The notes below the pieces were generated by a model, which was not told the DNA's origin, did no database searches, and worked only from the letters and a program-made list of their open reading frames with translations. From Hemiscyllium ocellatum (Eukaryota), in assembly GCF_020745735.1 (NCBI RefSeq), contig NC_083409.1:10343534-10407533 (forward strand): a stretch of DNA of 64,000 bases. Reading direction: 5' to 3'. The translations under genes were made by a program, and so were the position numbers. Below are positions 3,810-38,632 of this stretch, in pieces (the stretch's first letter is position 1; every line of letters starts with the position of its first letter).

Positions 3810-4317
3810 CAATGTGACTCTTTCCTGAAGTGCGTGGATCCGAGTCTGCTCCAATGTTCTCAGACAAAGTTCTCCTGAGGTTTGGATGTTAAAGCAAATC
3901 ATTGCGACAGTGTCGACGGAGCTTTACGCTGTGTCAAACCCCATGCTGTCCCTGTTCTGGGAGTCTTTGGTGGGTCAGAATTGACTTGTGATGCCAAGTA
4001 AAATCTCTTGAATTTGCTGAAGACTGTCAGCTGTACAAAACAATGTGAACCTCAGAATTCTCTGCTTCAGTAAACCAGATCTCCTTCCTGCTTAGCTGTC
4101 AGTTCCAATTTAAGGTTTTGTCACTGTTTGAAGGGACAGGATTCTCATGTTATTGAGCAATTCTCCACAAATGTTTTCCTCAAGCTCCATTGTGGCTGTG
4201 AATTTAAGCAGCTTCGTCTGTCTGGGCTGTTAATTGCAGTTTTTTTTCTGTCAATGTGAATGTGGAAAAGGGAATAAAGATGAAGATTCAGTCTCTGTCT
4301 CTGTGTGCTTTGGAAAT
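3810..4317 (+). pseudogene. Orphan Ig kappa C 3'UTR/polyA region (remnant W), plus strand
   Basis: It is the reverse complement of 38060-38560, e.g. gggaataaagatgaagattcagtctctgtctctgtgtgctttggaa and aacaatgtgaacctcagaa. Identity is roughly 80% by eye. No C exon is visible immediately upstream. Confidence 0.85.
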
Positions 4318-4677
4318 AGATGACCTTCCCCGACCCCAGTTGATTGGCTGCATTTCAACAGGTCGTTGTCAAGATTGGCTGGTTGGCCTGTCAATCAATT
4401 ACAATCATTAATCATTTTCATCTGGTCCCTTTGGTCAGGAATTTATGTAGATTACAAGATTCCAAAAAGAACAGAAACTGAAAGCTGTTAGGACTCAATA
4501 AGTACAATCTGATGCATTCCCTCTTCACTCTGTTGGTCCAGGCCCAGCTGATGGGATCGCACTGTGCAATCTCTGCTGCATGTTGGGTAGCTGCTGAAGC
4601 AATCTTCGGCCAATCACTGACTTTGTCAGCTGTGTCTCCCTGAAGTAAAAACAAGGACTGCAGATGCTAGAAACCAG

Positions 4678-4881
4678 ATTCTAGATTAGAGTGGTACTGG
4701 AAAAGCACAGCAGTTCAGGCAGCATCTGAGGAGCAGGAAAATCAACATTTCGGGCAAAAGCCCTTCATCAGGAAAAGAGCTCTATTCTTGATGAAGGGCT
4801 TTTGCCCAAAATGTCGATTTTCCTGCTCCTCAGATGCTGCCTGAACTGCTGTGTTTTTCCAGCACCACTCTAATCTGGAAT
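4678..4881. mobile_element. Fold-back Penelope-like terminal-repeat insertion (97-bp inverted arms, 10-nt loop)
   Basis: 4678-4774 is the reverse complement of 4785-4881 with few mismatches. It belongs to the same family as the terminal repeats of the GIY-YIG element at 23375-24605. Confidence 0.8.
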
Positions 4882-6244
4882 GTGTGCCTCTCTGAGTGTG
4901 AGTTTAACTTAATGCTGCTTGGAGGGGTCTCTCTCAGTGTGGATTTGTTACACAGAGAGACACCCACAGGCAGCGTTCAGTAATGCACCCACATTCGGAG
5001 ACACCTGTCTACGCATGGAGTGTGATCATGGTCCTCAGTGCTACCTGTCTCACAGAGTGAGTGTGTTACTCTTTGCTGTCCGTAGGTGTCTCTCTGAGGT
5101 ATGTGTCTCCGAGCGATGGATTGAGAATGGGCTTTGTGCTGGGGATTGAAGATTAGGCTTTAATCTTCTCAAATCATGAATGGAAAACAATTCAGCTGAT
5201 TCAGTCTGAGATGGCAGCTCATTCAGATGGCCGAAGTTAAAAAATCCAACAACTCCAGGTGATAGTTAAACAGGTTTATTTGTAAGTAGAAGCATTCAGA
5301 GCACTGTTTCTTCATTAGGTAGCTGGAGGGGCAGGATCATTGGACACAGAATTTATTGTAAATTGAGATGGCAGCTGAGAAAGGTGAATACTGAGAATGT
5401 ATTCTCAGTAAGGGAGGGATTTCAGAGGCAGTGGGCACTGTGCTCCCTAATGCAGAAATGTCGATTTTCCTGCTCCTCAGATGCTGCCTGACCTGCTGTG
5501 CTTTTCCAGCACTACTCTAATCTAGACTGTGCTCCCTAATGTGTTGCCCAATTACACCGGGACTTTCTGAATCCAGGGTCAATCGTGGCTGCCTGCCCAA
5601 CCAATGCTGGCTCCCCATAGTCATATTTCAGTGGTTAATTAACCCAAAACAAGGTGCAGCAATATTACCTTCCAGGGAGGGGAGCTGTCTGAGGGAGGGA
5701 GGTTGAATTCTTGCAGCCCCAAGAGAGGTTGCGGTGGATTAATGACAGGTATGACCACCATGAAGGTACCACTTTCTCTCCCCCTGCCCCAGCTGTGATG
5801 ACCCTCAGGTTAAAAGTGTGACTGCTCTGGGATGATGACCACATTCCTGGGTGATGGAGGGAAGGCCAACCTCTCCCAAAGGCAGCACAAGCTGGATCAA
5901 AGGTGAAACAAGAGTAAGCATGGGGAGATTGAGGGTGACAGAAGGAGGGGGTTGGTTGGCAAGTTGTTATTCAGAGTCAGGTCCCAGAGTATCAGTCCTT
6001 CTGACATTCCCCTTTCTATCTGTCAGCCAGAGCTCCCTGACTGGACAAATTTAACTGGCCCTGTCAGAGAACTCATATTTTATCAAAAAGAATAAAACAT
6101 TTATTGAACAAGGAGCTCAAGAGCTAAATGACACGAGACAAAATGAATGGTTTGAAAGGTTTCATTATGGACACTGCAAATGGAATTTGGAGAAGAAATT
6201 TTTTCACTCCACGGGTGGTGGGAATCTGGAATGGACTGTCATAA

Positions 6245-6540
6245 AATCCCTACAGTGAGGAAACAGGCCATTTGGCCCAACATTCCACACTGACCCTTGG
6301 AAGAGTAACCTACCCAAGATCCAATCCTCTATCTTATTACTCTGCTTTTTCCCTGACTGATGAGCCGAACCTACACATCCCTGACCACTGTGGGCAATTT
6401 AGCACAGCCAATTAACCTAACCTGCACATCTTTAGATTGTGGGAGGAAACCAGAGCACCCAGAGGAAACCTACGCAGACACTTGGAGAATGTGCAAATTC
6501 CACACATACAGTTGCCTGAGGCTGGAATTGAACCTGACTT
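6245..6540 (-). mobile_element. HE1-type tRNA-derived SINE
   Basis: It carries the characteristic body ctttagattgtgggaggaaaccagagcacccagaggaaacctacgcagacac, shared with several other copies in the window. Confidence 0.85.
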
Positions 6541-9310
6541 CGCTCCAACCTCTGCCTCCACTTCTGGCCCCACCCACTCTGCAACCAAGACTACGACTTC
6601 AATTCCCAGAGTCCCCCTGAGTCCAACTGCCTACCTGCAGCCAGCCAGCACACTCGCTCTCCCTCCTCACCCATACACCCCCACAGTGCACCCTATCCCT
6701 CCACTTCTCCATCTTCACCTCATCCCCACCTTTCCACTCCCACACCTCACTCCACAAACCACATCCGCCCCAATCTCCTTTCTCTCCCACACCCATTCTC
6801 TCCAATTCCTATCACCCTTGCCCCCTCCCCTCCTTCAGCCATCTCGGACCCCCCTGAAAACCTCGTCCCCCACCCTGAGCCTTGCCCCTTATTTACTATC
6901 CCCCCACGGCCTCGACCACTCTGAGGCCAAAAGGTCCATCCTGAGAAAAGGGCTCACATTCATTCCCCACCTCAAAAAATCCCGCACCCACCACGATGCG
7001 GAGCTCTTCTTCCACCACCTCTACCTCCGTGTCTTCTTCTTTAACAAAAACTCCCAACCTCCTTCTGAGGACCCCTTCTCCCACTTCCAACCTTCCTCCT
7101 CCACTTGGTCACCGCCCCCCCACCACCAGCTGTGTACACACCTTAGAGCTCTTCATTGCTGACCACTGATGTGACATCAGCCGCCTCAATTTCTCCACCC
7201 CCTCACCCTCTCCAACGATCCCTCCTCCAAACGTGCAGCCCTCCACTCTCTCCGTACCAACCCCTGGTTCACCATCAAACCCACTGACAAAGGCGGTAGT
7301 CTGGGGAACGGACCTCTATGTCACAGAGGCCGAACCCCAACTCTCTGACACCACGTCCTACCTCCCCCTTGCCCATGACCCCACCGTGACCCATCAGGCC
7401 AAGATCATTCACACTGTCTCTGCCCCCATTGCCTCCAATGATCTCCCCTCCACTGTCTCCAATCTCATAGTCCCCCAGCCCTGCACTGCCCAGTTCTACC
7501 TGCTCCCCAAGATCCACAAACCCAACTACACTGGCCGACCCATCATCTCAACATGCTCCTGCCCCACCGAACTCCTCTCATCCTACCTCAACTCCATCCT
7601 CTCCTCCTTGGTTCAGGCACTTCCCACCTACATCCGTGACATCAACCATGCCATCCATCTCTTCAGTAACCTTCAGTTCCCAGGCCTCCAGCACTTTACC
7701 TTCACTATGGACAGTCCTTATATACATCCATACCCAACAAGATCAGCCTCCTGGCCCTCTCTTTTTTTCTCTCCAACAGATCCATCCACTCCCCCTCCAC
7801 CAATACCCTCCTCCATCTGGCCGAACTGGCCCTCACCCTCAACAACTTTTCCTTTAACTCCTCCCAGTTCCTCTAAATCCAGGGGTGGCTATGAGTACCT
7901 GGATGGGCCCCAGCTCCCCCTGCCCCTTTATTGGCTATGCCGAACAGTCCCTCTTCAGTGCCTACACAGGCACTGTGCCCCAGCTCTGCTACCATTACAT
8001 CGATGACTGCGTTGGTGCAGTGGCCTGCACCCAGGCTGAACTGGAGCAGTTCATCGTCTTCGCCCACAACTTCCACCCTACCCTCAAGTTCACTTGGTCC
8101 ACCTCGGACACCTCCCTCCCCTTTATTGACCTCTCCATTCCCATCTCCAGTGACCGTGTTCAGATAGACATTTACTGCAAACTCATTATTACCCGGAATA
8201 TACATTCTCCCACCCAGTATCCAGCAAGAACTCCATCCCATTCTTCCAATTCCTCGGCCTCTGCTCTATCTGCTCGGATGAGGAGACATTCCACTCCCAA
8301 GTATTCCAGATGTCCACCTATTTCAAACAACATGCTTTTGCTCCCTCTGTCATCCATCGCACCACCTCCATTTCCCGTTCCATTGCTCTAAACCCACCCC
8401 CCTCCAAACAGAATAAAGACAGAGTGCCCATTGTCCTCACCTATCACCCAAACCAATCTCTGTATCCAACACATCATCCTATCCTGCCAACCCCAAACCC
8501 CACCACCAAGAATGTCTTCCTCACCATACCCCTGTCTGCCTTCCACAAGGACTGTTCTCTTTGACAATTCTTGGTTTGCACCACTCTCTCCACCATCTCT
8601 CCTGAACCCCTCGGTACCTTCCCCTGCAAACGGAAATGATGCAAAGCTTGCTGGTACACCAACCCCAGCACCTCCATCCAGGGCCCCAAACAGTCCTTCC
8701 AGGTGAGACAGACGTTCACCTGCCTCTCCTCCAACCTAGTTTACTGCATCAGGTGCCTGCGATGTGGTCTTCTCTACATCTGGAAGACCAAACATAAACT
8801 TAGGCAGTGGTTGGCCGTGCATCTCAGCTGGGTCTGTAGGGGTCGACCAGACCTCCCAGTCACCACCCATTTTAATTCCCCTTCCCACTCCCTTTCCACC
8901 ATGACCATCTTTGGCCTCTTCCATTGCCACAATGAACCAAATCGCAAATTGGAGGAACAATACCTCATCTTCCGCCTGGGCAGCCTACAGGCCAGAGGAT
9001 TCAACACTGAGTTCTCCAATTTCAAATACCCTCCCTTCCCATTCCCTGACTCCCTCCCCAATCCCTCCCATCTCTTCCACTCCTCTCTGCCACCAAACAG
9101 ATTCATTCCTTCCATTGACAAACCAGGTCGTGTCCTCTGCCTGTCTTCATCTATCCCCATTCTCCACCCTGCCCCCGCCACCCCCTTTATCTGCAGCTCT
9201 GCCTACACTCACCGCCATTCCTGAAGAAGGGTTACACCCAAAACATCAACTTCTTCACCGCCTGATGCTGCCTGGCTTGCTGTGTTTCTCCAGCCGCCTG
9301 CCTGCCATTG
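6540..9310 (+). mobile_element. Near-complete but frameshifted Penelope-like retroelement (RT + GIY-YIG)
   Basis: Translated motifs: FYLLPKIHKPNYTGRPIISTCSCPTE, FTMD, YIDDC (RT catalytic motif) and NLVYCIRCLRCGLLYIWKTKHKL (GIY-YIG). A terminal repeat sits at ~9215-9305. Confidence 0.9.
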
Positions 9311-10092
9311 AATGTAACCAACAGGAAAGGGCTGGACAATCAAGTGTCAGGGCCATCAACAAATGGGAATGGGACACACTACAGATAGATGCATTGAGTC
9401 AGTCAATCACAAAGAGGTGACCAAACTGAAAATGAAACACTCATACACAGTGGACGGAATTTAATATCAGAAAGTGTGAGACCATGCACTTTGTTCGGAA
9501 TAATCGAAAGGCCGACTATTATTTAAATAGTGAGAGATTTCAACAAGGATTCCAATTGCATATTTCCTGTAGCAGTAGATCCATTGAAGATCACATTTTC
9601 ATTTGGAGTTTGCCCAAGTTTCTGTCCAGGCTGATGCAGCATGGTCTACCAGTGCTGCTCCTATTGGGCTAAACACACGAGGGAATCTGATGGGCACTTT
9701 CTCTTTGTGATGGCAAAGGGAGAGATTTGGTTTTACTGCGATGGTGGCCAGAGAAATTAGGCAGTGGATGTAGTTCCAGCTGAGCAGAATGTTCTGATGT
9801 TCATGATGGGATTAACCTCGACAGTTCCCACTTGCCTTTACACTGACAGTGGGGCAGGAAGTCAGTGCTGACACCATCTACATGTTTCACAGAATGAACA
9901 AACAGCACACACTGTGAAGACAAGCAAAAGTCCCATCAAAGTACTTTTCTTATCACAGGGGACATTTTCATTGTGGTGCCCTCAGTACCCTACTTCTAAA
10001 GTTGCACTGTCTCTCTATGGGTCTCTGCAGATTGAGCCTGTCAGCTCCAAGCAGAGTCCCACTTTACGTTTTACTGATCAGGGACAGTGAAG

Positions 10093-10110
10093 CAGCTGCC
10101 CTCTAGTGGC
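10093..10110 (-). promoter_or_regulatory. CTCF-like motif GCCACTAGAGGGCAGCTG (reverse orientation)
   Basis: It matches the CTCF core CCASYAGRKGGC and is identical over 18 nt to the paralogous site at 25940-25957. Confidence 0.7.
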
Positions 10111-12954
10111 GAGAGAGCGCTTGCACGGCTGCTGAGGATTATGGGTCCCCTTCCATTCGCGCCCACACAAACCAGCAGCCACTTCAGCTGCTTTATTGAA
10201 AACCACAAGCTTTCAAGGCACTGTTCTTTCAACGGTGGAACTGGACACACGATCAAATGAGTTAGGGGCAGAGGAAGGAGATTCATCCTCTTGAGCCTGC
10301 TCCCCATGGCTGACCTGATTATTCCACATTCTTGCCTTACTCTGATAAATTCTTGAAAACAATGGCTATCTACTTCTTCACTACAAGCATTCAGAGGTTT
10401 CATTTCTATGTTTGATGAACAGTCCCAAAGATCTATGACCTTATGCAAGAAACAAAAACCTGCTTATCTCGGTCTTCTATGAGGGAACTTGTTTTAATTT
10501 GATATTCTCCCCGAAAAGGAAACATGCTTTTCACATCCACGCTGTATTCTATGTTCATGTTGATATGGCATCTGCTTTAATCAGCTGCTCTCTCATGAGA
10601 ACAGCAGCCTATCCTGCCACCTTCAGTGACTGATGCACAGAAACATCCAGGTCCTATCGCTCCTACACCCATCCATACTTGTACCCTTTAGTTTGTTTTG
10701 TCTCTCCACGTTTTCCTTCCAAAATGAATCAGTGACATCTATTTCCATTAAGTTGTTTCTACAGCCATCTGCTCATTCCATTAACTTATCTACATCCTTT
10801 TTGAAGTTAGACACTATCTTCTTCATCAGCCGTAATACATTCAAGTTTCATACCATCAGCAAAGTTTGAAGTTATGCCTTGTACACTCAGGTTAACATAG
10901 ATTTAAATATTTTAAATATGTTTTTTAAAAATGAACTATCTGATAAACTATTGTAAATTAAACCTCAAATTTATTGCCCATCTCTAGTTACTCGGACTGA
11001 GTTCTGAGCCAGATTATGGGGCCTTTAAGAATGAATCGTGTCACTGTGGGACTGGAGTCACAGACCGGGTGATGACTGGGTCCCCTTGTCCAAACTCCAT
11101 TCATGAACATGACATTGAGTTTCCTGGGTTTTTTTGTTCAGATCCCAGCGCTTTCCTTCCCAGATATTACATGGCTTACCACTGCCCCCTCCAGGACAAT
11201 TAGGAAAGGGCAACAAATAGCAGCCATTTTTGTTCCTGCCCATACCAGGAGAAATCAAAATAAATGAAATACTCTTCAAATGATCAAAGTGGTGAGGCTT
11301 GAATTCATCTTTTTGGAAGACTTGAGGCTAGGCTGGAAATAGAGCCATGACATGGGTGAACCTGGTTTGTCAGACTGAAAGGTGGAGTGTCCTTCAGATT
11401 GACGCTGGGATCAGACACAAAATGAATTACACTCAAAGACCGAACACACGGCTATCAAAGTGGGTCACCAAACTGCAAAGAGCAGCAATTTATCTCGGAG
11501 ACCTCAACTGGTAACAGTGGGTGTAAGAGCATTAGGCAGGCAAGTGTCAGATATTGTTGAACACAGCAGAAACACAGTCACACAGAAAGGGAAGCTATTG
11601 GGATAGAGCAGGGAAACGGGAATTACTGAATTTCTCCACTGACAGCTGGAAGGGGTTTTCTCAGTTGCAACTCCTCTGAGAATGATAAAAGTTGAAGGGC
11701 CGTTTATATTATAAACAACACTGTAGCGCGCAAGAAAGGATGTGGAGTGACAGATCTCCTCTAAATTGGAAACAATATCAGAAATAAAGGTCAATGTGAT
11801 TTTGGATTGAATACTGAGAGTGAGGAGATGGAGGGGAGAGTGACCATGGCAGCTGTCCTGAAGAATGGTTAGGTCATGGCTAGAATATGGTGCACAGTTA
11901 GGGGCTGCTTTGAGGGACAATACATTATGGGTAATGGACAGGGGATCAAGGGTCACAAGAGATGTGCAGGATAGCAAATGGAAAATGCATGGTTACAGGG
12001 ATAAGGTAGGGGAGGTGTGGGTCTAGGTGGGATGGTCTTCAAGGGTCGGTACGAGCTTGGTGGGCTGTGTGGCCTGTTTCCACCCAGCAGGAATTCCTCA
12101 ATTCTGTGATTCTGTGAAGGCCAGAACATGATCTCGAAAGTGGAGGGAGGGAATTCTGATGTTCAAAAATTTTTAAACAAATAAACACAGTAACCGTAGA
12201 TTTATCATCAGTGCAGACAAACTGAAAGGTAAAATGACTTATTCTCCAGTTATATACCAGGTACAGAAAAGGTATCAGGAAAAATGTTTTGATGCAGTTA
12301 TTGGAACATAATGATGAATGATGATAAACATAGTGCTTCATTCAAAAAAAGACAGAATTACTTTTTAGAATTTCAACAGGCCTGAAGCAAAAGAGGAAAT
12401 CAGGATCAAATAATCATTTGCAAATATAGTACTTGAGTGAGACAAGATCCTTCGTGTGAAAACATTTCATTTGGCCTTGCTTTCTCTCCATGGATGCTGC
12501 CTGACCCGCTGGGATCTCCATTCTTCTCCATTCTTTGGCTGCGCTATTTCTTACAAATTGTCTTGTTGTGTGCAAGACAAAAGCTTTGACAAAATGTCTC
12601 TGTTTTTCAGGAACACTTGAATTTGGATCAGTTTGGAGAGAAAGCAGGGCCATGGAATCATCTTTCCCTGCAGGGAGGGAGGGAGTGTGTGTGGAATCTC
12701 CCATGGGCAGGGTTCTCCTGGCTGCCACCATATGAGGAAGGCTGGAGCTTGATGATCGAGCTGAATGGACAGGGCTCACTCTCACAGTCCTCAGGGCCAT
12801 GGAGCCTCTTGTGATGGGAGCATCTGCTTGGTGTCGAGGGCAAACAATGACATTGCAGTAGAATTGGAAATGGGACAACTTGACAATGGATGCTGCACAA
12901 TGACTGCACTGCCTCTTCCTCTCTGCCTGATCCCTCCCCACACACAGCAGAAGG

Positions 12955-13735
12955 TGCATTAGGAACCTGTTCTAAAGGGCTACACAACACTGCAGCACTC
13001 CCGAGCTGCAAAGAGAAGAACATTTATACAAAGACTTTGCCAAGAACGGATATTCCTGCAACTTCATCCACAGATGCCTAACAGACAAACAACGTGATGA
13101 GAACATGCCACGACCTAACACACTAGCCACGCTACCTTATATAAAAACATCACAGTACTGACAGCTAGACTTCTCCAACCATTCATAAACTGCCCAGAAA
13201 CTGACAGCCACGCTCAGACAACAACTCATGAGAACAAAAGGCCCAATACCCACTGTGTGAAAGACAGATGTAATTTACAAGAATCCATGCAACGTTTTGC
13301 ACGAAACACCTCGGACAAACAGCCAGACAACTAGCCATCCACATCCATGAACACCAACGAGCCACTAAACCCCATGAGCAGCTGTCCCGAGTAGCTATAC
13401 ACACAGATGACAAGGACCACGAATTCGATTGGGCCAACACTATGATCATAGGACAAGCTCAACAGAGGGCAGCCAGAGAATTTCTAGAGGCATGACACTT
13501 ATCCATGGGCTCCATCAATAAACATATTGACCTAGACCCAGTACACTGACCACTGCAACGAACATCAGGAACCAGTAACTGAAAACAGCAAGAAAGGAAC
13601 CAAATAAATTCCAGAAGACACAGGACAACAGCGCATCACAGGAAGCTCCAAAGCTCTGAAGATGTCAACGACATAGGGGACAAAATGTCTACAAATCAAC
13701 TTCCCAGCTCAGCGAGCATACCCATAACTACAGCA
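12955..13735 (+). mobile_element. Penelope-like element 3' fragment, second family
   Basis: The decayed ORF end shows ATLPYIK, GQTARQLAIHIHEHQRA and HEFDWANTMIIGQA in shifting frames. The terminal repeat is related to 21499-21728. Confidence 0.75.
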
Positions 13736-14652
13736 AAAGTGAGGGGTTTTCCTGTCCTACAGTGCTCTCCAAATCCTTACCTGCCCTCCTCATTGTCATA
13801 CCCTCCTGCCCCTTCCTACATATGGAATGGGACAACCTGGTCCTGAGGCTTATAACATCCTTCTGGAACAAAGTCTCCAGGTATCTCTGCACCTCCCTGA
13901 TGTGTCACCAATACTTTCAACTCAGCCTCCAATCCAAACACTCTGTGTGGGAATTGTTGTAGATTTATCCTTTCACTACAGATGTGTTTAATCTGAGTCA
14001 CTTTAACTCAATAAAGAAATGTTGATCCCATTTACAAACGAAAGATGTCTATTCCTCTATCAGTATCTGAATTAAAGTTTTAGTGCTTTCCATTTATTGA
14101 CCTTCCCGAATGGGGATGTTCCGAAGCAGTACAAGACGACATGAGGATACAGATGGGCTGGAGGGTCAGATGGGCTGATCAGTAACAAGTGTAATTCATT
14201 CAGATAAATGTGAGTCAGTGAGCTCTCCCTGACCATGAGAGTGAGGTGAGGGCAGAGTGACGGCCCTTGACATCAAGGCCTCTTTGATGGTGTGTGGCAT
14301 CAAGGAACCTGAGCAATGCAGCAGTTTTTCACCTGCTGTTCCAGGGAAGGGATCAACATCTGGATCCCTCGGAGCAACTCCTCAGAGTTCTGTCATTCTG
14401 AAGGGACGCGTTCTCCTTCTCAACTGTGTGAAGACACACTGCCAGTCCATCAGCAATGAGGCAATCAGCTCTGAACACTCCCTGAGTGAGCTCACTCCAT
14501 TATGTTCAGATGCACTGCCAAAGAGCCCATTCTCCCTCTTCTTGTTCGCCCTCCCATCCCAGAGACCCCCGTGAACCCCTTCAGTTCGCTCTCCACTGGA
14601 GGGGGCTGATCCCAGTGGTTTTGATGGATGCATCTGTGTGTGAGATGTATGA

Positions 14653-14684: not shown

Positions 14685-14686
<2 letters not shown>

Positions 14687-15129: not shown

Positions 15130-15809
15130 TCCAAAGCACACACGAAACAGAGACAAAGACAGAGACTGAATCTTCTTCATCTTTATTCCCCTTTCCGGAC
15201 TGACATTGACAGAAAACAGTCAGCAATTAACAGCCCAGACAGAGGAAGCTGCACAAATTCACAGCCACAATGGAGCTTGAGGAAAACACTTAAGGTGATT
15301 TTCCCAATAACATGAGAAGCCTGTCCCTTTAAACAGTGACAAGACCCTGAGGTGGAACTGATGGCTAAGCAGGATGGAGATCTGGTTTACTGAAGCAGAG
15401 ACTTCTGAGGTTCACATTGTTTTTATACAGCTGACTGTCTTCAATACCTTTGAAAGGTTATGCTTGTTATCACAAGTCAACGTTGTCCCCAGCAAACAGT
15501 CTCCTGGACAGGGACAGAATAGGGTTAGATACAGAGTAAAGCTCTTTCTGTACTGTTCCCACCAAAGACACCCAGGACAGGGACAGGATAAGAAACAGAA
15601 TAAAGCTGTCTCCACACTGACAGGAACAGCACTGGTTGGGTACAGAGTGAATCTCTGTCTATCATGTCACAGTTACCCGCCTTAAACCCCGAACCTCAGA
15701 GTCTCCAGAGGCCAGTCTCACGAAGGAAGAGAGTTGAAATTCAGTGCTGACAATGACCTTTGTCCTGCCAGCTCAGCCCTGTTCTATTTAAAGTTGTGTC
15801 TCCTCTGTG
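15130..15809 (-). pseudogene. Orphan Ig kappa C 3'UTR (remnant X); homology to the live gene stops 16 nt short of the stop codon
   Basis: It is colinear with 38060-38616, including the near-identical stretch gaaggaagagagttgaaattcagtgctgacaatgacctttgtcctgccagctcagccctgttctatttaaagttgtgtctcctctgtg. The sequence then diverges, and no C, J or V follows. Confidence 0.9.
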
Positions 15810-16275
15810 CACAACACCTAACAAACTCGATCTTTTTTTTTAAATTCCCTTTTATTGTGGACATTGAAGTCCCCCACCCAGAGTACATTCTGTGCCCTCA
15901 CTCCCCTCAGACCTTCCTCCAAGTGCTGTTCAACATGGAGGAGAGACTGACTCATCAGCCGAGGGAGGACAGAACATGGTCATCAGCCAGAGGTTTCACA
16001 GAATCAGAGAATCATACAGTGTAGAAGAGGTCCCTCATCTGATCATGTCTGTCCCACCAAGGCAAAACTAAATCTACTCTCCATCCACTTTCCAGAACTG
16101 GGCCCAAAGTATTGAATGTTCGGATATTTCAGGCGCTCATCCAGGCATTTTTTAGAAAGGTATATTTTATGTGGATCTGCTCTGCTCTTCTCATAGTGTC
16201 ATAGCATCTTCTATTGTCCCCTGAGAGGGCAGACATCAGAACATCCCATCTGAAAGATGGTCCCTGAGAACTGAA

Positions 16276-16657
16276 CCTCTGACAGTGTTGCACTCCCTCA
16301 GTGTTGACACACCAGCAGTGCAGCACTCCCTCATCATGAACTATCTGACAGTGCAGCACTCCCACAGTATTGACTTCCTGATATTGTGGCATTCCCTCAG
16401 TACGAACCCTCTGACAGTGTGGCACTGTCTCAGTACTCACCCTCTGACAGTGCAACCCTCCCTCAGCACTCACCCTCTGACAATGCAGCACTCCCTCAGT
16501 ACTGACCCACCATTAGTGTAACAATACCTCAGTAATGACCCTTCAATAGTGTGGCACTCCCTCAGGACTCTCCCTCTGACAGTGTGGCAGTCCCTCAGTA
16601 CTGACCCTCTGACAGTGTGGCAGTCCCTCAGTACTGACCCTCTGACAGTGTTGCACT
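16276..16657. repeat. 33-bp minisatellite, ~12 degenerate copies (cctctgacagtgtggcagtccctcagtactgac)
   Basis: The units are adjacent with no spacers, which produces the HCQRVSTEGLP periodicity in the ORF track. The unit resembles an internal segment of Deu-type SINEs. Confidence 0.9.
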
Positions 16658-24605: not shown

Positions 24606-24611
24606 ATACAG

Positions 24612-24920: not shown

Positions 24921-24939
24921 TCCACATATTTAGCTGGGA

Positions 24940-25939: not shown

Positions 25940-25957
25940 GCCACTAGAGGGCAGCTG
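25940..25957 (+). promoter_or_regulatory. CTCF-like motif GCCACTAGAGGGCAGCTG (forward orientation)
   Basis: It matches the CTCF core and is 18/18 identical to 10093-10110 within otherwise diverged paralogous flanks. Confidence 0.7.
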
Positions 25958-28900
25958 TTCCACTGTCCCTGAACAGAACAAATGAACTGGGGCCCTGCTC
26001 GGGTCTAACCGGTTCAATCCGTAGAAATGCGGAGAGAGAGGGAGGTTCGGGAAAGCTTCTGAACCAGGATATTTATCACACCCCAGTGAAATTTCCCCTG
26101 TGATATGATCGTCTTCATAGTGTGTTTTTTTTATTCATTCTGTGATACACATAGATTATGTCAGTGCTGAGTGACACAAAGTATGTTCCCTCCATTAAAC
26201 ACTTTCCAAAACACCCTCTCCATCTTTCCTTACTCTCTTATTGACACTTCTACAATTGTCCCTGTTCCCTCACTCTGTCCCGGTCCCAGAGGGATTGATG
26301 GCTGGAGTTCATGACCCCGCACTGTGTGAAGGTTGGTGTGAAGTGAGGCCAGTGTGCTGGAGGTTGGGCTCCTGCCTCAGGCCCAGGTGTAGGGACCTGT
26401 TCAACAATCTGCACAATGTTTTGGTTTTTCTTGCTGATCGCAGACATTTTAATATTGCTTAATAAACTAATGATGGAAATATATCATTTCAAGGATCATT
26501 TAACGTCATGGTCCTAGTTTGTAATGGACCCTCATTCATGATAACACAGTTTTCAATGCTTCTCTCCCCTTACGTGTTACGAAGAGCTTTGCAAACATGT
26601 TTTGATGAGGACAGTGTGTCTTCGACACCATGTAACGGAGTGGGTGGGTGTTTGAATTCTCATCCCCCTACGTCCAGCTTTCAAGGAAAACAACCCATTT
26701 TCTCCTGTCCCATTTCTTTGTCCGCCATTGCAGGAAACGCAAATCTCTCCCTTTACCCGCACAAAGAGAAAGTGGCGTCAGATTCCCTGGTGTGTGATGA
26801 TTTCCCCCAATAGGAGCAGCACTGGTAGATCATGCTGTATCAGCCTTGACAGAAACCTGGGGCAAACTCCAAATGAAAGGATGACCTTCAGTGGATCTGC
26901 TGTGACAGGAAATATAGAATTGGAATCCTTGTTCCCGAATCACCTCATCAAACCCAAATACAACTGAGAAAATATAAACCAAACCAATTTCCCAAGGACA
27001 TTCATCAGAACACAACAAGAAAATAGTTAACAGGCAGTTACTGTCTCTGGAGAGTGTCACTGTAACTGTCCCCTTTCTCTCAGGGTCGTGTAGTTGTTCC
27101 TGTCCCCTCCCTCTTTGGGGCCATACTATTTCTGCCATCCTTTCTGTCTGAGGATGCTACTGTCCCTGTCTCCCAACTGTCCAGCGTCAAGGAGGGAGTT
27201 GACACCCACCTGGTTTGTTAATTCGTTTTACTCAATCCCTGATTCACTACACTGACCCGAGTGTTAAAGCTTAGCACAGGCTACCATTCATCTCAATCAA
27301 ATCACAGGGTCTAAGATTGGTCAGTAATGTCTGGCCCCAGAACAATAACACTGACTGACTGGAGACAACCCAGATCAAGTCCCACTGAGAGTGTTATTGA
27401 CCTTCACACTCAAAGCCCACCAAGGAGGTGGTTGTTGTTAGTCTCAATGTTGCCACAGATTAAGTTCTCCCAGAGATTCATAATTCATTCTAGATTTTAA
27501 ACAAGGAAGGGATGTTGTGGGGAGACAGATGGGAAGGCATGGAGAGGAAACAAAAAGGAGAGAGAATTGCACTTCTGTTACACCGTTCATGAGCTCAGGA
27601 TGTTCAAAGATGTTTTACAGCTAATGGAATACTTCCAAAGTCTAGTCATTGTTGTAATGTGGGAACTGTGACAGCCCATTTCCTCTCAGCAGGCTCCCAC
27701 GATAACAGCGAACGATTGACAAGGATCTCAGGGATAGGACACGGAGTGGAGAATAGGATGGAATGGCAAGTGAAACCCAAGCAGCCAATGAGGCCTGAGT
27801 ATTAGGCTGGGTGGAAGGGAGATGTCAAAGGAAATGGGCTTCTTAAAATTCCTTCATGGGATGTGGGGTTCACTGAATGGGCCAGCATTTATTACCTACC
27901 CCAAGTTGCCCTGGTGAAGTTGGTGCTGAGTTGCTTTCTTGAACTGGTGCATCCAAGTAGACAGACTCATAAAGCCCTTCGAGGGGAAATTCCAGGATTT
28001 TGACCCAGTGGCAGTGAAGGAATAGTTCAAAGTCAGGATGGTGAGTGGCTTGCATGGAGCTTCCAGGGATTTGGTGTTCCCATATATCTGCTGCCCTTAT
28101 CGTTCCAGACTGAAGCAGTCATGGGTTTGGAAGGAACTATTTGAAGGACGTTTGATGAGCTGGTGTTAGTGGGACAGTCGGCTGGAAATTCCCTTTCCTT
28201 TTACATCTGTCAATAAATAACTCCTGGGCAGTAATATCAACAACAACAACTTGTATTAATATTGCATCTTTAATATAGTAACCATTCAAAAGGTGGGAAC
28301 ATACGGTGTTTGTGATGGTGACCAAAAAGAGAGAAAGAGCTCATTCTAAGAAGAGAGAGGGGTTTGTGGAGGAAATCCCCGTGCTGAGGGCCTGGGAGAG
28401 TGAAGGCACAGCTGAGAGTCATGAGGGGGAAGGCCAGAGTGGAGAGTTTGGGAGATGGGGGAGGGATTGAGGATAACCGAGTGGTCCGTTATATCACCTC
28501 CCCCACCTGCTGCAGCAGGAGACTGGGGAGAGGAATTGGGAGGCTGGGCAAGGCACCACCGAGAGGCTGGAGGCTGTTACTGCAAGCAGGGTCCAAACCA
28601 GTTCTGCTGTGAGAAATTGGAGCAGGAGGATGCTTCCAATGCCAGTCCATCCTTTCTTAAATACAGAGACCAAAACTGCACACAGCCCTGCACGTGCAGG
28701 CTCATTAACACACATTAGAATTGGTACAAGGTTTCTCTATTTTTAAATTTCAACCCGCAGCAATAAATGTTAAAATTCCATTCACCCCCACCCAGTGCCC
28801 GAGAGGTTGCGGGGTAGAGGGTGTGGGTTGGGGCGGGGGAGATGTGAATGACAGCATTTTCCGACAGAAGGAATGCTAAAAATGCTATCACTATAAGAGT

Positions 28901-30270: not shown

Positions 30271-33200
30271 GGGACATTTTAGACAAGACACCTTGTTGCC
30301 AGCTCGTTACTGCAACTTGATCCAGTTCATTCAGAAAGAGACAAAGGACAATGTGCAGATTGTTGAACAGGCCCCTACACCTGGGCCTGAGGGAGGGGCC
30401 CAAGCTCCAACACACTACACATGAAATTTAAGACAGAGTGGGGTCATGAACTCTGTCCATATGTTCCTTTGGGACCGGAAAGGAGTGAGGAAATAGAGGC
30501 AATTGTAGAAGAGTCAATAAGGATTAAAGTAAGATGGAGAGAGCGTTTTGGAAAGGGGCTAGAGGAGGAAATAAACTTTTTGCCACCCAACGTTGACATA
30601 GTCTCCATGTATCACACCATGAATAAAATAGCACACTGTGAGGACAATCAAAAGTTACACCAAGTACTTCTTTTTGATATATCACAGCATGCAGAGCATT
30701 TTCATTGTGGGGCAATTAGGTATCCTGGTTCAAAAGATGTTCTCTCTCTCTCTCTCTCTCTCTCCCCCCTTGTTTGTACAGATCGGGCTGGTTAGATCCT
30801 CACAGAGCCCCAGTTTATTTGGACTGTTCAGTAATGTGGAAATGCCGATGCTGGACTGGGGTACACCTGATGAAGGAGCAGCGCTTCAGAAGTTTGTGAT
30901 TTCAAATGAATCTCTTGGGCAAGAACCTGGTGTAGTGAGTCCTCTGACTTTGTATTGTTCAGGCACAGTGAAACAGCTACTTTCTAGTTACTATGGAGGA
31001 CTTGCACAGCTGCTGAAGACTATGGGTAATGACTCCTTCCATTAGCTGCAAACACACCAGTAGTCATTCTAGTGGATTCCAGTGGGAATGACCAATCAGT
31101 TACTTTGACCTAGTTCCCCAGTTAATCAGGCCATGGCTGACCTGGAATACATTCTCCCTTTGTCCTGTAAACCGTACTGCCCTGAGTAAATGGATATTGA
31201 AACCCAGCCTCAACAGCTTTTTATTTTGGATTGAGAGTTCCAGATTTCCATCACTCTGTCGGAAGGAATTTTTCCTGAAATCGTCTGAATTACAATTTTA
31301 ACAACCCTCTTGTTCTGGACTCTGGGACTGGAGAAAGCAATTTACATCAACATTGTTCATCATCTCTGGGGAAACGTCTCGCTGATGTAACCTGTTCTTT
31401 CTCATTAACAGTTTCTGATCTGAAGGTGACATCACAGGCTGGATTCTGAGAGGGTGGATCCTATTATTGGGCAGACGAGAACTGGGGTCTGGTTTAACAC
31501 AAACCAGTCTCCTGTTTAAAGGGAAGGAGGGGTTTTCTTGCTGAGGGTTGACAGTGTGTGGAATTCTCTTCTCTAGATGGGAATGGAGGTTCACTCATGG
31601 AGTTGGCTCAAGGTTACAGTAGACAGATTTTTTGATGAACAAGGCAATTAAGGATAATGGGAGGGGTGGGGAAGCAGAAAGTGCAGGTGAGACCATAACT
31701 AGATGAGCAATGATCTTCTTCATTGGCACAGCAGCTCCCAAAAGGCCTGCTCCTGCTCCTGGGTCCTATGTTCTGGCAGAGGCTGCAGCAACCCTGGACC
31801 CCCATCTTTCCTTTGTCACTCACTGACAAAAATATAATTTTAAAATGAAAATTATTTTCTTAAATAAAACCAACTCAATTCTTGTTGCAGTCATTTTCTT
31901 TGCTGGCTTTTAATTTCAGCAGGGTTTTAGAAACACGTCATTTGTCTTATGTTGCAGTGGAGACAGACACAAGGCAGTGAGGCCTCAGAGAACACCGAGA
32001 GCTTTCACTCTGCACAACAAGGCTGTCAGCACAAGCATCTGGTGACAGGATTGTAGGGGGTTGAAAAGGAGAGAGTCACGGAGAGAAGAGACCTTATAGT
32101 TCAAAATAAAACCTCTTCCTATATTCCCACACTCTAATGAATTAATGTTAGAGGATTAGAGACCCAGAACGGTGAGAGTGTGCTGGCTCAGAGGCTTAAA
32201 GGCAGAGAGCAAGGAGCTGCATTATTCCTTCTCATTATTATTTCTGCTTCATCATTGGCGAGCTTCATATTTATTGCCCAACCCCAGTTGCTTGGACTAA
32301 GTTCTTTGCTGAACCAGATCATGGGGTCATTAAAAATGGATCATGTCACAGTGGGGCAGGAGTCACAGACCAGGTTCCCTCACCCAAAGAACATTTGTGA
32401 ACATCACATTGAATTTCATGTCTTTTTTGTACAGATTCCAGCGCCTTCCTTTCCAGGTATTACATGGCTCACCCCCGCCCTCTCCAGGACAATTGGGGAA
32501 AGGCAACGCCCGCTCTGGAGAAATCAGGAGAAATGATGTAAAATTAAAATGATTAAACTGGTGAGGCTTGAATTCATCTCTTTGGAAGACTGGACTCTCG
32601 GCCAGAAACAGAGCCATGACATGGGTGACCCTGGTTTATCAGACTGAAAGGTGGAGTGTCCTTTGGATTGACACTGGGATCAGCAAAAAAATGAATTACA
32701 CTCAAAGATCCAATAAACAGCTATCAAAGTGGGTCACCAAACTGCAGAGTGCAGCACTTGCAGCTCCGCGTCCCCATCTCTATCCTTGCTGTTGCCCTTC
32801 CCTAACTGTCCTGGAGAGGGCGGTGGTGAGCCATGGGTTTCTCAAAGAGGATCTGACAGAAGGACAAGGTCATGTCCTCGGCCTGAGCACAACTGCCTGA
32901 CCTGCTGTGCTTTTCCAGCGCCACAGTTTTCGACTCCGAGTAAACTATCCCTCACGAGAATGAGCTGTGGCACATGGGAAAACGTGAGAGTGTGGGAAAG
33001 GAACCAGCAGCCTGGTCAGCCTGCAGAGGGGAAGAAACAGATTTGGTGAATGAAATGATATCCTTCTGAGCTGAAATACAGACTCAGGCTTTCAGATCCA
33101 CACAGTTTACATTGTTACTGATGGTGACTCCATGGGCAATGTTCCTGCTTCAGAGTCAAATGGTCATTGGATTGAACTCTGACACAATGTTATGTATGGG

Positions 33201-35160: not shown

Positions 35161-38099
35161 TCCAGGCTTCCTGCAAATATCAGCCTTCCTTCTATTGTAG
35201 TGCTTCTTCATAGGAACTTCTCTCTGGCGGTTTCAAGTACACATCCTCCATGGAAATATCACAGACTTTATTGAAATGGGATGAGCTGAAAGAATAGAAG
35301 GAAATGGGAAGAATTAACCAGACAAGGGTGTGCATCAAGAGAGATGGGAGTGTGTGGGAGACTCTGTGCCATTAAAAAATCCCAAAGGAGTTTCACAAGA
35401 AAAGCTCGAATCTTTACAAGGATATAACAGGGAGATGACTTACTGACATCAAACAGGTTGGGTGTTAGGGACCCTGTGCCTCTGGTGCCTAACTCTATTT
35501 GAGACATTACAGTCAAGGATGGTTGATGTGTAAATAAAGGGTGACTTGATGATGTGGAGTTATTTCATGATCAATGACCGGGGGCAGAGATTTAAGAGAA
35601 ATGGCTGAAAATTAAGAAGGAATATGAGGAAACATACTTTCGTGCAGTAGGTGGTGGTAATTTGTAACTTGCTTTCTGTAAGAATGGTTGAGGCAGAAGC
35701 TCTCCCATATCATTGAAGTATTTCGGTGTGCAGCTGTTATACCAAGGCACACAGGACTATGGGCTGAGTGCTGGAACATGGAATTAGAATAGTGAGGTGG
35801 TTGTTTGACTGGCTTTGGCTCATTGAGCAGAAGGGTCCTGTTCTTGTAGACCTGTTGTAGACATCTGACTCTGCCAGGACTCCAGCAATGTGGCTGACCC
35901 TTACCTGCCATTTGAAAGGCCCAGCAAGCCACTCAGTTTCAGGGCAGTTAGGGATGGGGAACAAATGCTGGTCTTGTCAGTGACACCCACATCCCAGGAA
36001 AGAATAGACGGCCTCAGTAACACAGTCACCTGAACCTGCAGGTTTCAAGCCCCACTCCAGACACTGGAGCACTATCCTGAGACTGGCAAACGTAAAGACG
36101 CCATCTGCTGGATGATCGGTTAAACCACTGCCCTCTCAGGTCGATGTGAATATAAGGGCTTTGTGACCATCTCAGGGAAACTCTCCCCAGTGTGCTGGCC
36201 AATGCTTCTCTTATAACCAATGGCATTAAAACAGATACAAGAGTAAAATACAGCAAATCTCAAATAAAACAAGATGCTGGAGAAAGGGAACAGGTGCAGC
36301 CGCTTTAGAGAGAGGAGGGAATAATGTTTTGGATTCAGTGATGTTTTATCAAAAAGACACCACAGTTTTTGATGATTTTATTTAATTTTAACCTGTTTTA
36401 TGTTATTTTGTTTTATTTAAATCTTGTTTATCAAATTTCTCTCGGCTTGATTGGCACCACATCGACATATATCCATTGTCTCCACATTGACCCTCAGTAA
36501 CAGCTGTGTGCACTATCTACAAGATACATTGCAGAGATTCAGCAAAGATCCTGAGAGAGTACCTTCCAAACCCATGACCACTTCCATCAAGAAGGACATG
36601 GTAGCAGATACACAGGAACACCGGTCTTTGCACGTTCCCCTCAAGCCATTTTGCATTCTGATATGGAAATATATCACTGTTCCTACATTGTTACTGGGTC
36701 AGAATCCGAGAATCCCCTTCCTCTGCACATTCTGGGTCTACCTACAGCACACAGACTGCAGCGGTTCAAGAAAGCAGCTCAGCGCCACTGTGTACATGAC
36801 AATGAGAGATGGACAGTAACAAGGCTGGTGCAAAGTAAGAGCAGGTGTGATTAGGGATCTGAAAGTGAGAATGTGATGTTTCAGTTTGTTCTGAACATCT
36901 CAAAGTTTGTATGAGCTTTTGGTCTCCTAATTGCAGAAAGAATATAAATCCATTGGAAGTGTTTCAGAGGAGTTTTACCCGACTGATCCCTGGTATGAGG
37001 GGTCTGTGTGATGAGGAAAGATTGGAAAGGCTGGCCTTGTTCTCACTGGAGTTTCGAAGAGTGGGGGGTTTTCCTGTCCCACTTTATTCTCCAAAACTTT
37101 ACCTGACCCCCTCTTGGGTCATACCCTCCTGCCCCTTACTAACATGGAATCGGACTGCCCAGTCCTGAGGCTTACACCTTCCATCTGGAACAAAGTCTCC
37201 AGGTATCGCTGCCCCTCCCTGATGTATCAGGATTCTTACAACTCAGCTTCCAATCCAAACCCCCTGAGTGGGAGTTGCTGTAGTTTTATACAGTCTCGTG
37301 TGGACTGAAGAACACAACAGTCAGGACAATGAGCTGCTCTGGAATCCACCCTGAGCCCTGGATGACCCTCACTGAGATGATCCAGGGGCTACTGAACATT
37401 CTCTCTGACCCCAGGGACACACGGGACAATTCCATCTCATTTGAAGAGTAAAGAAAACCCAGGTCTAATTTATGGAATATTTATTACCCAAACCCTGTGG
37501 AATTGTTATTCTGAGTTCCAAGATTCGGCTGATCATATAGATCAATAGAGTGTCCCCAGTGACCTTGATTTGAATTGCTTGGCTCAGGATCTTGCTGTCC
37601 CTGATGGATGGGTTGGTGTGGAGGGGGAATTGCCCTCAGAATATTTTGTACCAGGGATTGATCAAGTCAGTATAGTGGGTGACATGGTGGCTCAGTGGTT
37701 AGCACTGCTGCTTCATAGTGCCAGGGACCTGGGTTCGATTCCTGCCTCAAGCAAATATCTATGTGGATTTTGCCCATTTTCTTCAAATGCTGTATGGAGT
37801 ATTTGCTTTGCAAACCCTGTGGTATCATTATTCTGGGTAGCAAGATCCTGCTGGTCAAATTGATCAATAAAATGCGAACTGAACTGCTTGGCTCGGGATC
37901 TTGCTGTGCTGAAAGGATGTGTTGGTGTTCAGGGGAATTCCCATCAGATTATTGTGTTCCTCATTGCCCCCTCTATTCTCCCCTTCCTGCTCCATACCTG
38001 GGGGTGGGGTGGAGCTTATAACTTTGTACACCTAGCCCTGAGGACTCAGCTCTGACCATTCCCAAAGTACACAGAGACAGAGACTGAATCTTCTTCATC

Positions 38100-38105
38100 T
38101 TTATT
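38100..38105 (-). terminator. Polyadenylation signal of the C exon transcript
   Basis: AATAAA lies ~530 nt after the stop and is followed by GT-rich gattcagtctctgtctctgtgt. It is conserved in the two paralogous UTR copies (15182-15187 and 4273-4278). Confidence 0.75.
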
Positions 38106-38632
38106 CCCTTTTCCAGATTGACATTGACAGAAAACAGTCAGCAATTAAGAGCCCAGACAGAGGAAGCTGCTCAAATTCACAGCCACAATAGAGCTTGAGG
38201 AAAACACATGTGGAGATTTTCTCAATAACATGAGAATCCTGTCCCTTTAAACAGTGACAAAACCTTAAATTGGAACTGGCGGCTGAGCAGAAAGGAGGTC
38301 TGTTTTACTGAAACAGAGACTTTTGAGGTTCACATTGTTTTAGCACAGCTGACAGTCTTTAGCATCTTCGAGAGGTTTGACTTGACATCGCAAGTTAACA
38401 CTGTCCCCATCAAACACATCCAGGTCAGGGAAAGCATGGGGCTAGATAAAGAGTAAAGTTTTCTCTACACTATCCCAATGACCAGCCTTAACCCCTGAAG
38501 CTCAGAAGTGTCTCTGAGCTGGTCCTGAGAAGGAAGAGAGTTGAAATTCAGTGCTGACAATGACCTTTGTCCTGCCAGCTCAGCCCTGTTCTATTTAAAG
38601 TTGTGTCTCCTCTGTGGACTGTCTCAAACACT

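What the first reader, a model, noticed from the sequence alone, without database searches (positions are those of the whole stretch)
3810..38632. Fossil array of oppositely oriented Ig-kappa clusters: three coding-less remnants beside one intact gene
Seen in sequence: the C 3'UTR occurs three times (plus at ~3810-4317, minus at 15130-15809, minus in the live gene). The downstream flank also occurs three times (minus 9540-15130, inverted 17270-26940, minus ~29000-38060), with colinear or exactly inverted block order. The implied layout is W-> <-X | Y-> <-Z, i.e. two tail-to-tail pairs. X and Y are joined head-to-head across only ~1.45 kb (15810-17270) that holds no V, J, C or RSS. Inference: one deletion could have removed the coding halves of two divergent clusters. 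The live flank separately lacks ~1.3 kb that X and Y share. Shark cluster organisation is established, but this record of inversion and cluster death is informative.
Basis: partly seen in the sequence, partly recalled or inferred. Interest (0 to 1): 0.7.

Follow-up and report, generated by a model that had tools for sequence, protein, structure and literature searches.

The report
Co-amplified dead kappa cluster relic
The repeated blocks are real remains of antibody light-chain gene clusters, but the central remnant pair is an old dead cluster copied at least 37 times as this shark-type kappa gene array grew, and one supposed remnant is a newly broken gene.

Summary
Three copies of the C 3'UTR and three copies of the downstream flank lie in the layout W-> <-X | Y-> <-Z. 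They are colinear and specific to this locus.

The interpretation needs three corrections.

1. W is not coding-less. Its J-C intron fills window 1-3879. Its V and J lie 4.4-4.9 kb left of the window. They are joined in the germline and out of frame. W lacks only the C exon, through a private deletion of about 2.5 kb (junction at 3872-3879).

2. The X|Y remnant is not a local fossil. At least 37 copies with the same breakpoints are scattered over an 18-Mb kappa array that holds at least 150 intact C exons. Of 39 copies checked, 32 sit 11-15 kb tail-to-tail from an intact C exon. The remnant arose once, early, and was copied along with its live partner.

3. One deletion does not explain it. Other copies keep the last 86 nt of the C exon. 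The 1.45-kb junction holds two pieces of X's own V-upstream region. X therefore lost mid-C to about 5 kb upstream of V internally, and a second break joins Y's distal flank.

Z is an intact, unrearranged V-J-C cluster. The scan had already noted the out-of-frame VJ on the adjacent DNA. This is ordinary pseudogene biology. It gives a useful record of how the array grew, with moderate interest.

The parts
1..3879 (+). W cluster: distal part of the J-C intron. The cluster's germline-joined VJ lies at window -4940..-4370, in L065.
   Evidence: Colinear and inverted against Z 47024->40281, in blocks of 69-83% identity. W-type copies elsewhere match 3300-3878 at 92-95%, about 2 kb upstream of their C exons.
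3872..3879 (+). W's private deletion junction. About 2.5 kb is missing: about 2.0 kb of intron, the whole C exon and the first ~130 nt of the 3'UTR. The breakpoints share 5-7 nt of microhomology.
   Evidence: No other place in the genome spans the junction. One 88-nt unitig of run X2 bridges 3837-3920 with no mismatch.
3872..4317 (+). W 3'UTR remnant, with AATAAA at 4273.
   Evidence: 84% identical to Z 38508-38058 and 97% identical to a W-type copy's UTR. In the UTR tree it sits inside a clade of live UTRs on a long branch.
4318..9300 (+). W downstream flank. It includes a repeat-like block at 7850-9300 that matches Z 35111-33623 at 72%. There is no D block.
   Evidence: Related repeat copies lie at 23411-24353 and 51068-51559. 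Pfam gave no family for its ORFs.
9542..12657 (-). X relic: distal flank block D.
   Evidence: Colinear with Z 30594-32759 and inverted against Y.
13735..13968 (-). X relic: proximal flank block.
   Evidence: 83% identical to Z 37057-37289, in colinear order.
15153..15812 (-). X relic: complete 3'UTR, with AATAAA at 15187. A 133-nt deletion at 15812/15813 removed the C-exon tail that other copies keep.
   Evidence: The relic UTRs form their own clade with 100/100 support.
15851..16154 (-). Two adjacent fragments of the V-upstream region of the former X cluster.
   Evidence: About 70% identical to Z 54488-54644 and 57452-57607, which lie 5.2 and 8.2 kb upstream of Z's leader. They also match L061 6712-6868 and 9533-9691. 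Strand and order are the same, with E 1e-17 to 1e-21. These Z and L061 segments lie inside conserved upstream blocks.
16261..16657 (.). Minisatellite inside the junction: a 33-nt unit repeated 12 times.
   Evidence: It is also present in the other copies L066 and L067.
17274..19246 (+). Y relic: proximal part of D. It starts exactly at the point matching Z 33134.
   Evidence: The same junction-to-D transition is found in other copies.
19247..25414 (.). 6.2-kb insertion in Y. It holds LINE reverse-transcriptase fragments, short repeated units and a repeat-like ORF block.
   Evidence: It is absent from Z (32451->31508). A weak RVT_1 match lies at 20507-20986. Repeated units are listed.
25415..26933 (+). 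Y relic: distal part of D.
   Evidence: Inverted against Z 31508-30348 and X 9542-10136.
30348..33134 (-). Z cluster: distal flank block D.
   Evidence: Many copies at 88-94%, all inside the kappa array. They lie 5-7 kb, or 18 kb in one subfamily, downstream of C exons in a fixed orientation.
38058..38632 (-). Z 3'UTR, with AATAAA at 38105.
38633..38961 (-). Z constant exon, 38961->38636, with stop codon TAG at 38635-38633.
   Evidence: Open frame with a C1-set match at E 1e-21. The acceptor is TTTCAG|GC in phase 1.
48183..48256 (-). Z J segment, coding 48217->48183 with donor GTAAGT. Its 23-spacer RSS has the nonamer at 48256-48248 and the heptamer at 48224-48218.
48664..49223 (-). Z leader exon (49223->49175) and V exon (48988->48692). 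The 12-spacer RSS has the heptamer at 48691-48685 and the nonamer at 48672-48664.
   Evidence: V-set match at E 1e-17. Sequence shown. The best solved-structure matches are kappa V domains.

Best explanation
**What the span contains.** The span 3810-38632 holds the tail ends of two convergent Ig-kappa miniclusters. W is on the + strand and is now dead. Z is on the - strand and is intact and unrearranged. Between them lies an old remnant module, X|Y.

**What X is.**
- X is the 3' half of a former cluster. It has the D block, the proximal flank and a complete 3'UTR with its polyA signal.
- An internal deletion removed the 5' part of the C exon, the J-C intron, J, V and about 5 kb of upstream DNA.
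- That deletion fused the C-exon tail to fragments of X's own V-upstream region.
- A minisatellite and a second break then lead into an inverted D block, which is Y.

**How it spread.** This composite arose once, before the live clusters sampled here diversified. It was then carried as a passenger each time the module [W-type cluster + relic] was duplicated, directly or in inverted order, as the array grew to at least 150 clusters.

**Events local to this window.**
1. A 133-nt deletion removed X's remaining C-exon tail. The two closest copies elsewhere share it.
2. The germline VJ join of W is out of frame.
3. A private, microhomology-flanked deletion of about 2.5 kb removed W's C exon.
4. About 6.2 kb of repeat sequence was inserted into Y.

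**Shown versus inferred.** Shown: the layout, the breakpoints, the copy distribution, and the state of W and Z. Inferred: the order of events, and that Y was once a whole cluster.
For: - **Layout and colinearity:**
- **W:**
  - In L065 the 485-nt V-J spacer and both RSSs are exactly missing, and J is read out of frame.
  - The intron is colinear with Z down to 3879, then jumps to the UTR.
  - The junction is unique in the genome. One copy elsewhere has 2493 nt between the two flanks, including its C exon.
- **Relic family:**
  - One search lists at least 37 copies that match both the UTR part and the junction part.
  - The two parts are separated by a constant 131-140 nt (116 nt in two copies).
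  - L066 and L067 show that this spacer is the last 86 nt of the C exon, with its frame intact, plus a 35-nt intron piece.
- **Pairing with live clusters:** 32 of 39 copies lie 10.9-14.9 kb from an intact C exon on the strand expected for a tail-to-tail pair.
- **Junction origin:** the junction pieces match the V-upstream region of Z and of L061, in the same order and strand.
- **D block:** it occurs only in the kappa array, at fixed distance and orientation from C exons.
- **UTR tree:** the relics form a 100/100 clade outside all 46 live UTRs, and W lies within a live clade.
Against: - The tree is rooted at the midpoint only, so 'older than the live radiation' is not proven.
- Only two other relic copies were read base by base. 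The rest are known from coordinates.
- Genome searches scored only 40-150 of about 1000-7500 first-look candidates, so the counts are lower bounds and the sample favours the best matches.
- Nothing of Y's V, J, C or UTR survives, so Y could be an inverted partial duplication rather than a dead cluster.
- The 70% matches to the V-upstream region are short, about 150 nt each.
- Read support for W's deletion is one short unitig, probably from the same animal as the assembly.
Confidence: 0.8

Rival explanations
1. One reading: four clusters once stood here, and one local deletion between head-to-head clusters X and Y removed both coding halves, leaving a fossil specific to this locus.
For: The orientations and colinear flanks fit. 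Live head-to-head pairs exist on both sides of the window, with about 35 kb between the V segments: Z with the L064 cluster, and the L061 cluster with W.
Against: The same junction occurs at least 37 times elsewhere, so the event was not local. Other copies keep a C-exon tail, an intron piece and two V-upstream fragments of X. This needs at least two breaks on the X side alone.
Confidence: 0.1
2. Y was never a cluster. The inverted D block beside X arose as an inverted partial duplication of flank DNA, for example by fold-back repair at the break that killed X.
For: Y has no trace of a UTR, a proximal flank or coding sequence. In every copy it starts at the same point, matching Z 33134.
Against: The D blocks of X and Y are no closer to each other (67-83%) than either is to Z's (70-77%). 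If a duplication happened, it was as old as the split from Z-type clusters. The alternating orientation of live neighbours makes a former fourth cluster plausible.
Confidence: 0.25
3. The blocks are high-copy interspersed repeats, or the junctions are assembly errors.
For: Parts of the flanks are repeats: LINE reverse-transcriptase fragments, short repeated units, and the block 7850-9300 against 35111-33623. Read depth over some bins is very high.
Against: All scored matches to the UTR, D block and junction lie in the kappa array on C9 6.5-24.3 Mb, or on small contigs that also carry C exons, in fixed order and orientation. The X|Y junction is repeated independently in dozens of copies. W's junction is bridged by a unitig at single-copy depth.
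Confidence: 0.03

Closest known systems
Nurse shark NS4 (type III / kappa) light-chain clusters, including germline-joined genes and pseudogenes (Lee et al. 2000, PMC2193156)
   Same: The V-J-C minicluster layout matches. Split and germline-joined VJ genes sit in one family. The joins have varied, trimmed junctions, and some joined genes are pseudogenes.
   Different: That work estimated about 50 genes, about 10% of them joined, from clones of a few kb. Here at least 150 C exons lie on one chromosome and at least 38 joined VJ copies were scored. Cluster orientation, the DNA between clusters and remnants without a C exon were not described there.
Cartilaginous-fish Ig minicluster organisation as reviewed in PMC12227049
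   Same: Each V-J-C is a cassette, and clusters of one isotype lie together.
   Different: [quoted passage not shown] This array exceeds that number. It also shows a repeated composite unit of two live clusters plus a dead pair.
Truncated (unprocessed) pseudogenes carried inside segmental duplications. One example is the inverted proximal and distal copies of the human IGK locus with their many V pseudogenes (from my own knowledge, not tested here).
   Same: Dead gene pieces are copied as passengers of larger direct or inverted duplications in an antigen-receptor locus.
   Different: Here the passenger is the 3' half of a whole V-J-C cassette fused to its own upstream region. It has been amplified dozens of times at a constant position behind one cluster subfamily.

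Membership tests
Ig light-chain V-J-C minicluster of cartilaginous fish (applies to Z) | Leader exon plus a V-set exon with an open frame | tested here: met
   V-set match at E 1e-17. The leader runs 49223->49175 and the V exon 48988->48692.
Ig light-chain V-J-C minicluster of cartilaginous fish (applies to Z) | RSS at V and at J with complementary 12 and 23 spacers, and one J a few hundred nt downstream of V | tested here: met
   V carries CACAGTG, a 12-nt spacer and ACAAAAACC. J carries GGTTTTTGT, a 23-nt spacer and CACTGTG. The V-J spacer is about 470 nt.
Ig light-chain V-J-C minicluster of cartilaginous fish (applies to Z) | A single C1-set constant exon spliced in phase 1 to J, followed by a 3'UTR with a polyA signal | tested here: met
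   C1-set match at E 1e-21. The donor is GTAAGT after J and the acceptor is CAG|GC. AATAAA lies at 38105.
Kappa (type III / NS4) isotype | Groups with reference NS4 / type III sequences rather than lambda, sigma or sigma-2 | tested here: inconclusive
   No shark reference sequences were available to the tools. The best solved-structure matches of V are mammalian kappa V domains, at about E 1e-35. The 12-spacer V and 23-spacer J arrangement is the kappa type (my own knowledge).
Germline-joined VJ gene (applies to W) | V and J contiguous, with both RSSs and the spacer exactly missing and the coding ends trimmed | tested here: met
   L065 586/592 corresponds to Z 48698/48212. Five nt of J are trimmed. 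Other joined copies carry different junctions.
Germline-joined VJ gene (applies to W) | Present in germline DNA, not a somatic rearrangement caught by the assembly | not testable with these tools
   The tissue source is unknown. With hundreds of clusters, a somatic join of one cluster would be rare among reads (inference).
Truncated cluster pseudogene (applies to the X relic) | Homology to a parent gene's 3' end that stops at a fixed internal breakpoint, with the upstream exons absent | tested here: met
   Other copies keep the UTR plus the last 86 nt of the C exon. The break falls at the point matching Z 38721 in both L066 and L067. tblastn finds no V, J or C.
Interspersed repeat / transposable element (considered for the UTR, D and junction blocks) | Copies dispersed over the genome regardless of locus | tested here: not met
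   All scored copies lie in the kappa array or on small contigs that carry C exons.

The most novel reading that the evidence does not exclude
The relic may be kept by selection rather than carried as a passenger. In at least 32 modules, a convergent polyA-bearing UTR plus inverted D blocks sit 11-15 kb behind every W-type cluster. They could act as a transcription terminator, or as a chromatin boundary between convergent clusters that must rearrange and be expressed independently.
Probability: 0.06. Interest if true: 0.7.

Novelty: new variant of a known kind. Interest (0 to 1): 0.4.

Why it matters
How the hundreds of Ig miniclusters of sharks are laid out, and how the arrays grew, is described in the literature as poorly known (PMC12227049).

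A dead cluster with fixed breakpoints, riding along with one cluster subfamily, is a natural marker of descent. Its shared secondary deletions, such as the 133-nt loss common to three modules, order the duplications.

It also shows that the unit of growth was a composite of about 50-90 kb made of oppositely oriented clusters, not a single V-J-C cassette.

The window also records one way a cluster dies today: a nonproductive germline RAG-type join plus a microhomology-flanked loss of the C exon.

None of this changes how shark antibodies are thought to work.

Tried and rejected
- **Neighbouring DNA.** Most of the neighbouring 80 kb could not be fetched.
- **Repeat naming.** Pfam gave no family for the long ORFs of the repeat at 7170-9221, 23411-24205 and 34164-34811. 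My guess that they are Penelope-like elements is therefore unsupported and was dropped.
- **Structured RNAs.** Rfam found nothing in the window.
- **Junction versus C-proximal DNA.** The junction 15813-17273 has no match to the 1.5 kb around 60 live C exons. It is therefore not proximal J-C intron.
- **Reads.**
  - The runs are held only as unitigs of 60-150 nt.
  - They gave one bridging record for W's junction, from what is probably the assembly's own animal.
The X|Y junction therefore rests on the other genome copies, not on reads.
- **Related species.**
  - Runs of three other organism labels hold 0.19-0.29 of the 31-mers of 15500-16260, against 0.30-0.41 in the source species.
  - This hints that the relic family exists in related species.


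Full report
**Setting.** The window is G000:C9:10343534-10407533 of a 3.98-Gb genome.
- A search with the constant-exon protein returned 150 scored matches, the limit of the listing. All are at 93-100% identity, and 149 have no internal stop (one has a TAG).
- They are spread over C9 6.5-24.3 Mb and a few small contigs, on both strands.
- The window is therefore a small piece of a very large array of Ig light-chain miniclusters.
- A recent paper gives 'as many as 100 loci' as the known upper range. It also says the genomic distribution of these clusters is not well known (PMC12227049).

**The live gene, Z (- strand).**
- Leader exon: 49223->49175.
- V exon: 48988->48692. It is followed by CACAGTG, a 12-nt spacer and ACAAAAACC.
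- J: preceded by GGTTTTTGT, a 23-nt spacer and CACTGTG. The coding part runs 48217->48183, with donor GTAAGT.
- J-C intron: 9.2 kb, full of repeats.
- C exon: 38961->38636, stop TAG at 38635-38633.
- 3'UTR: extends to about 38058, with AATAAA at 38105.
- Pfam gives V-set (E 1e-17) and C1-set (E 1e-21). The best solved-structure matches of V are kappa V domains.
- tblastn finds no other V or C in the window.

**Checking the observation.**
- Self-BLAST confirms three 3'UTR copies: W 3872-4317 (+), X 15153-15812 (-) and Z (-). They are 83-85% identical, and each has its polyA signal.
- It also confirms three colinear flank copies. The block lists are in the observation check.
- The layout W-> <-X | Y-> <-Z is correct. 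So is the statement that X and Y share about 1.3 kb that Z lacks.
- Only a minority of each flank is homologous. Y contains a 6.2-kb insertion (19247-25414) with LINE reverse-transcriptase fragments and short repeated units.

**Are the blocks interspersed repeats? No.**
- Z's distal flank block D (30348-33134) has many copies at 88-94% identity. All are inside the kappa array.
- Each lies 5-7 kb downstream of a C exon, or 18 kb in one subfamily, in a fixed orientation.
- The same restriction holds for the UTR and for the X|Y junction.

**W is a whole cluster, recently broken.**
- I fetched the 5 kb left of the window (L065). It carries the promoter, leader and V of a + strand cluster. V is 94% identical in DNA to Z's V.
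- In L065, V is directly joined to J. Position L065 586/592 corresponds to Z 48698/48212. The 485-nt spacer and both RSSs are exactly gone, and 5 nt of J are trimmed.
- The join puts J out of frame...YYCMQYSSSPRSVKEPSSD*.
- The J-C intron then runs colinear with Z's into the window, down to 3879. That point matches Z 40281.
- There the sequence jumps to Z 38508, inside the 3'UTR.
- A genome search with 3300-4400 finds the two halves separately in dozens of clusters, at 92-97% identity.
- In one of them (C9:11448106-11451712) the halves are 2493 nt apart and enclose its C exon.
- No other locus spans the junction. The breakpoints share 5-7 nt.
- One 88-nt unitig of run X2 covers 3837-3920 without mismatch, at single-copy depth. 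It probably comes from the animal that was assembled.
- W has therefore been hit twice: a nonproductive germline join and a private loss of its C exon.
- In the 3'UTR tree W sits inside a clade of live clusters on a branch 20 times the median length.

**The X|Y remnant is a family.**
- A search with 15100-17600 returned more than 100 matching pieces.
- At least 37 loci carry both the UTR part and the junction part, at 80-96% identity. In many of them the match runs through to 17600, that is, into Y's D block.
- In all but three loci the two parts are separated by a constant 131-140 nt (116 nt in two).
- The three exceptions are the window and C9:15027924 and C9:16800794 (91% to the window), which align without a gap.
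- I read two copies, L066 and L067. The spacer is the last 86 nt of the C exon, with the frame ...ARFSC(S/A)LTHVTLPSPLSKSIRRSECV* intact, plus a 35-nt piece that lies 80-110 nt upstream of the C exon in Z.
- All copies therefore share the same break inside the C exon. Window X and its two closest relatives have additionally lost the 133-nt remainder.
- I compared the coordinates by eye. Of 39 relic copies, 32 lie 10.9-14.9 kb from an intact C exon on the strand that makes them tail-to-tail. This is the same relation as W and X here (about 11 kb).
- The partners that I hold as loci (L045, L057-L059) fall in W's clade of the UTR tree. The three relic UTRs form a 100/100 clade outside all 46 live UTRs (midpoint root only).

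**What the 1.45-kb junction is made of.**
- It does not match the 1.5 kb around live C exons.
- A more sensitive search shows that 15851-15997 and 15998-16154 match Z 54488-54644 and 57452-57607. These lie 5.2 and 8.2 kb upstream of Z's leader.
- They also match the corresponding places upstream of the neighbouring minus-strand cluster, L061 6712-6868 and 9533-9691.
- Strand and order are the same throughout. Identity is about 70%, with E 1e-17 to 1e-21, and L066 and L067 give the same result.
- Those Z and L061 segments lie inside long conserved upstream blocks at 84-90%.
- X therefore lost mid-C through about 5 kb upstream of its V by an internal deletion.
- Next come a minisatellite of 33 nt repeated 12 times, a short repeat piece, and then Y's D block. 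D begins at exactly the point matching Z 33134 in every copy.
- At least two breaks are needed, not one.

**Whether Y was a cluster cannot be decided.**
- Nothing but D survives of Y.
- The D blocks of X, Y and Z are about equally distant from each other, at 67-83%.

**Larger frame.**
- The neighbours alternate in orientation.
  - A minus-strand cluster has its V at about window -39000 (L061).
  - W is on the + strand.
  - Then come X|Y, then Z on the - strand.
  - A + strand split cluster has its V at about window 84800-85300 (L064).
- Window 69726-74000 matches window -20000..-15500 at 93-95% in direct orientation. This suggests that a composite of about 90 kb was duplicated in tandem.
- The closest relatives of the W+X module look functional. 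They have an in-frame joined VJ (L070 and L068), an intact C exon about 12 kb downstream, and a relic 11.4-11.5 kb beyond it.

**Verdict.**
- The 'fossil array' is the local copy of an old composite module that was amplified with the array.

**Comparison with the literature.**
- Known: germline-joined and pseudogene kappa (NS4) clusters (PMC2193156).
- Not found in the papers searched: a co-amplified cluster stump without a C exon, and the scale and alternating orientation of the array.

Noticed in passing
G000:C9 6.5-24.3 Mb plus contigs C10-C13, C291, C375, C388, C456, C597, C628, C694, C741, C1873: At least 150 kappa constant exons at 93-100% protein identity, on both strands. Of these, 149 have no internal stop. 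This exceeds the 'as many as 100 loci' quoted in PMC12227049.
   Followed up: partly
L065:60-630 (window -4940..-4370); L068-L071: Germline-joined VJ genes are common here: at least 38 scored copies are contiguous across the join. Their junctions differ. L068, L070 and L069 are in frame. L071 and W are out of frame, and L071 runs into a TAA. The most similar V and J (98-99%), at C9:22702323-22703436, is still split by about 535 nt.
   Followed up: partly
L063 (window 69726-74000) against L062 (window -20000..-15500): A direct repeat at 93-95% identity with a period of about 89.7 kb. This suggests a tandem duplication of a composite unit that holds two live clusters and the relic pair.
   Followed up: no
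window 32463-32507 and 32791-32835; Y 17521-17646 and 19109-19234: The D block holds an internal inverted repeat. The ~1.3 kb shared by X and Y but missing from Z lies between its arms. Some Z-type copies have about 300 nt at the same site. This could be an old element with inverted ends, or a deletion between the arms.
   Followed up: no
window 54644-57452 and L061 6868-9533: Live minus-strand clusters have about 2.8 kb, including a LINE fragment, between two upstream pieces that are adjacent in all relic copies. The relic may preserve the state before that insertion.
   Followed up: no
window 15500-16260: Sequencing runs of three other organism labels hold 0.19-0.29 of this stretch's 31-mers, against 0.30-0.41 in the source species. 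The relic family may exist in related species.
   Followed up: no
window 18641-18940, 22537-22856, 23047-23285, 24615-24919, 6239-6536, 45630-45953, 37668-37784: A repeat unit of about 240-300 nt is present at least 7 times in the window. One inverted pair is 98% identical (23047-23285 against 24853-24615). It looks SINE-like and was not named.
   Followed up: no
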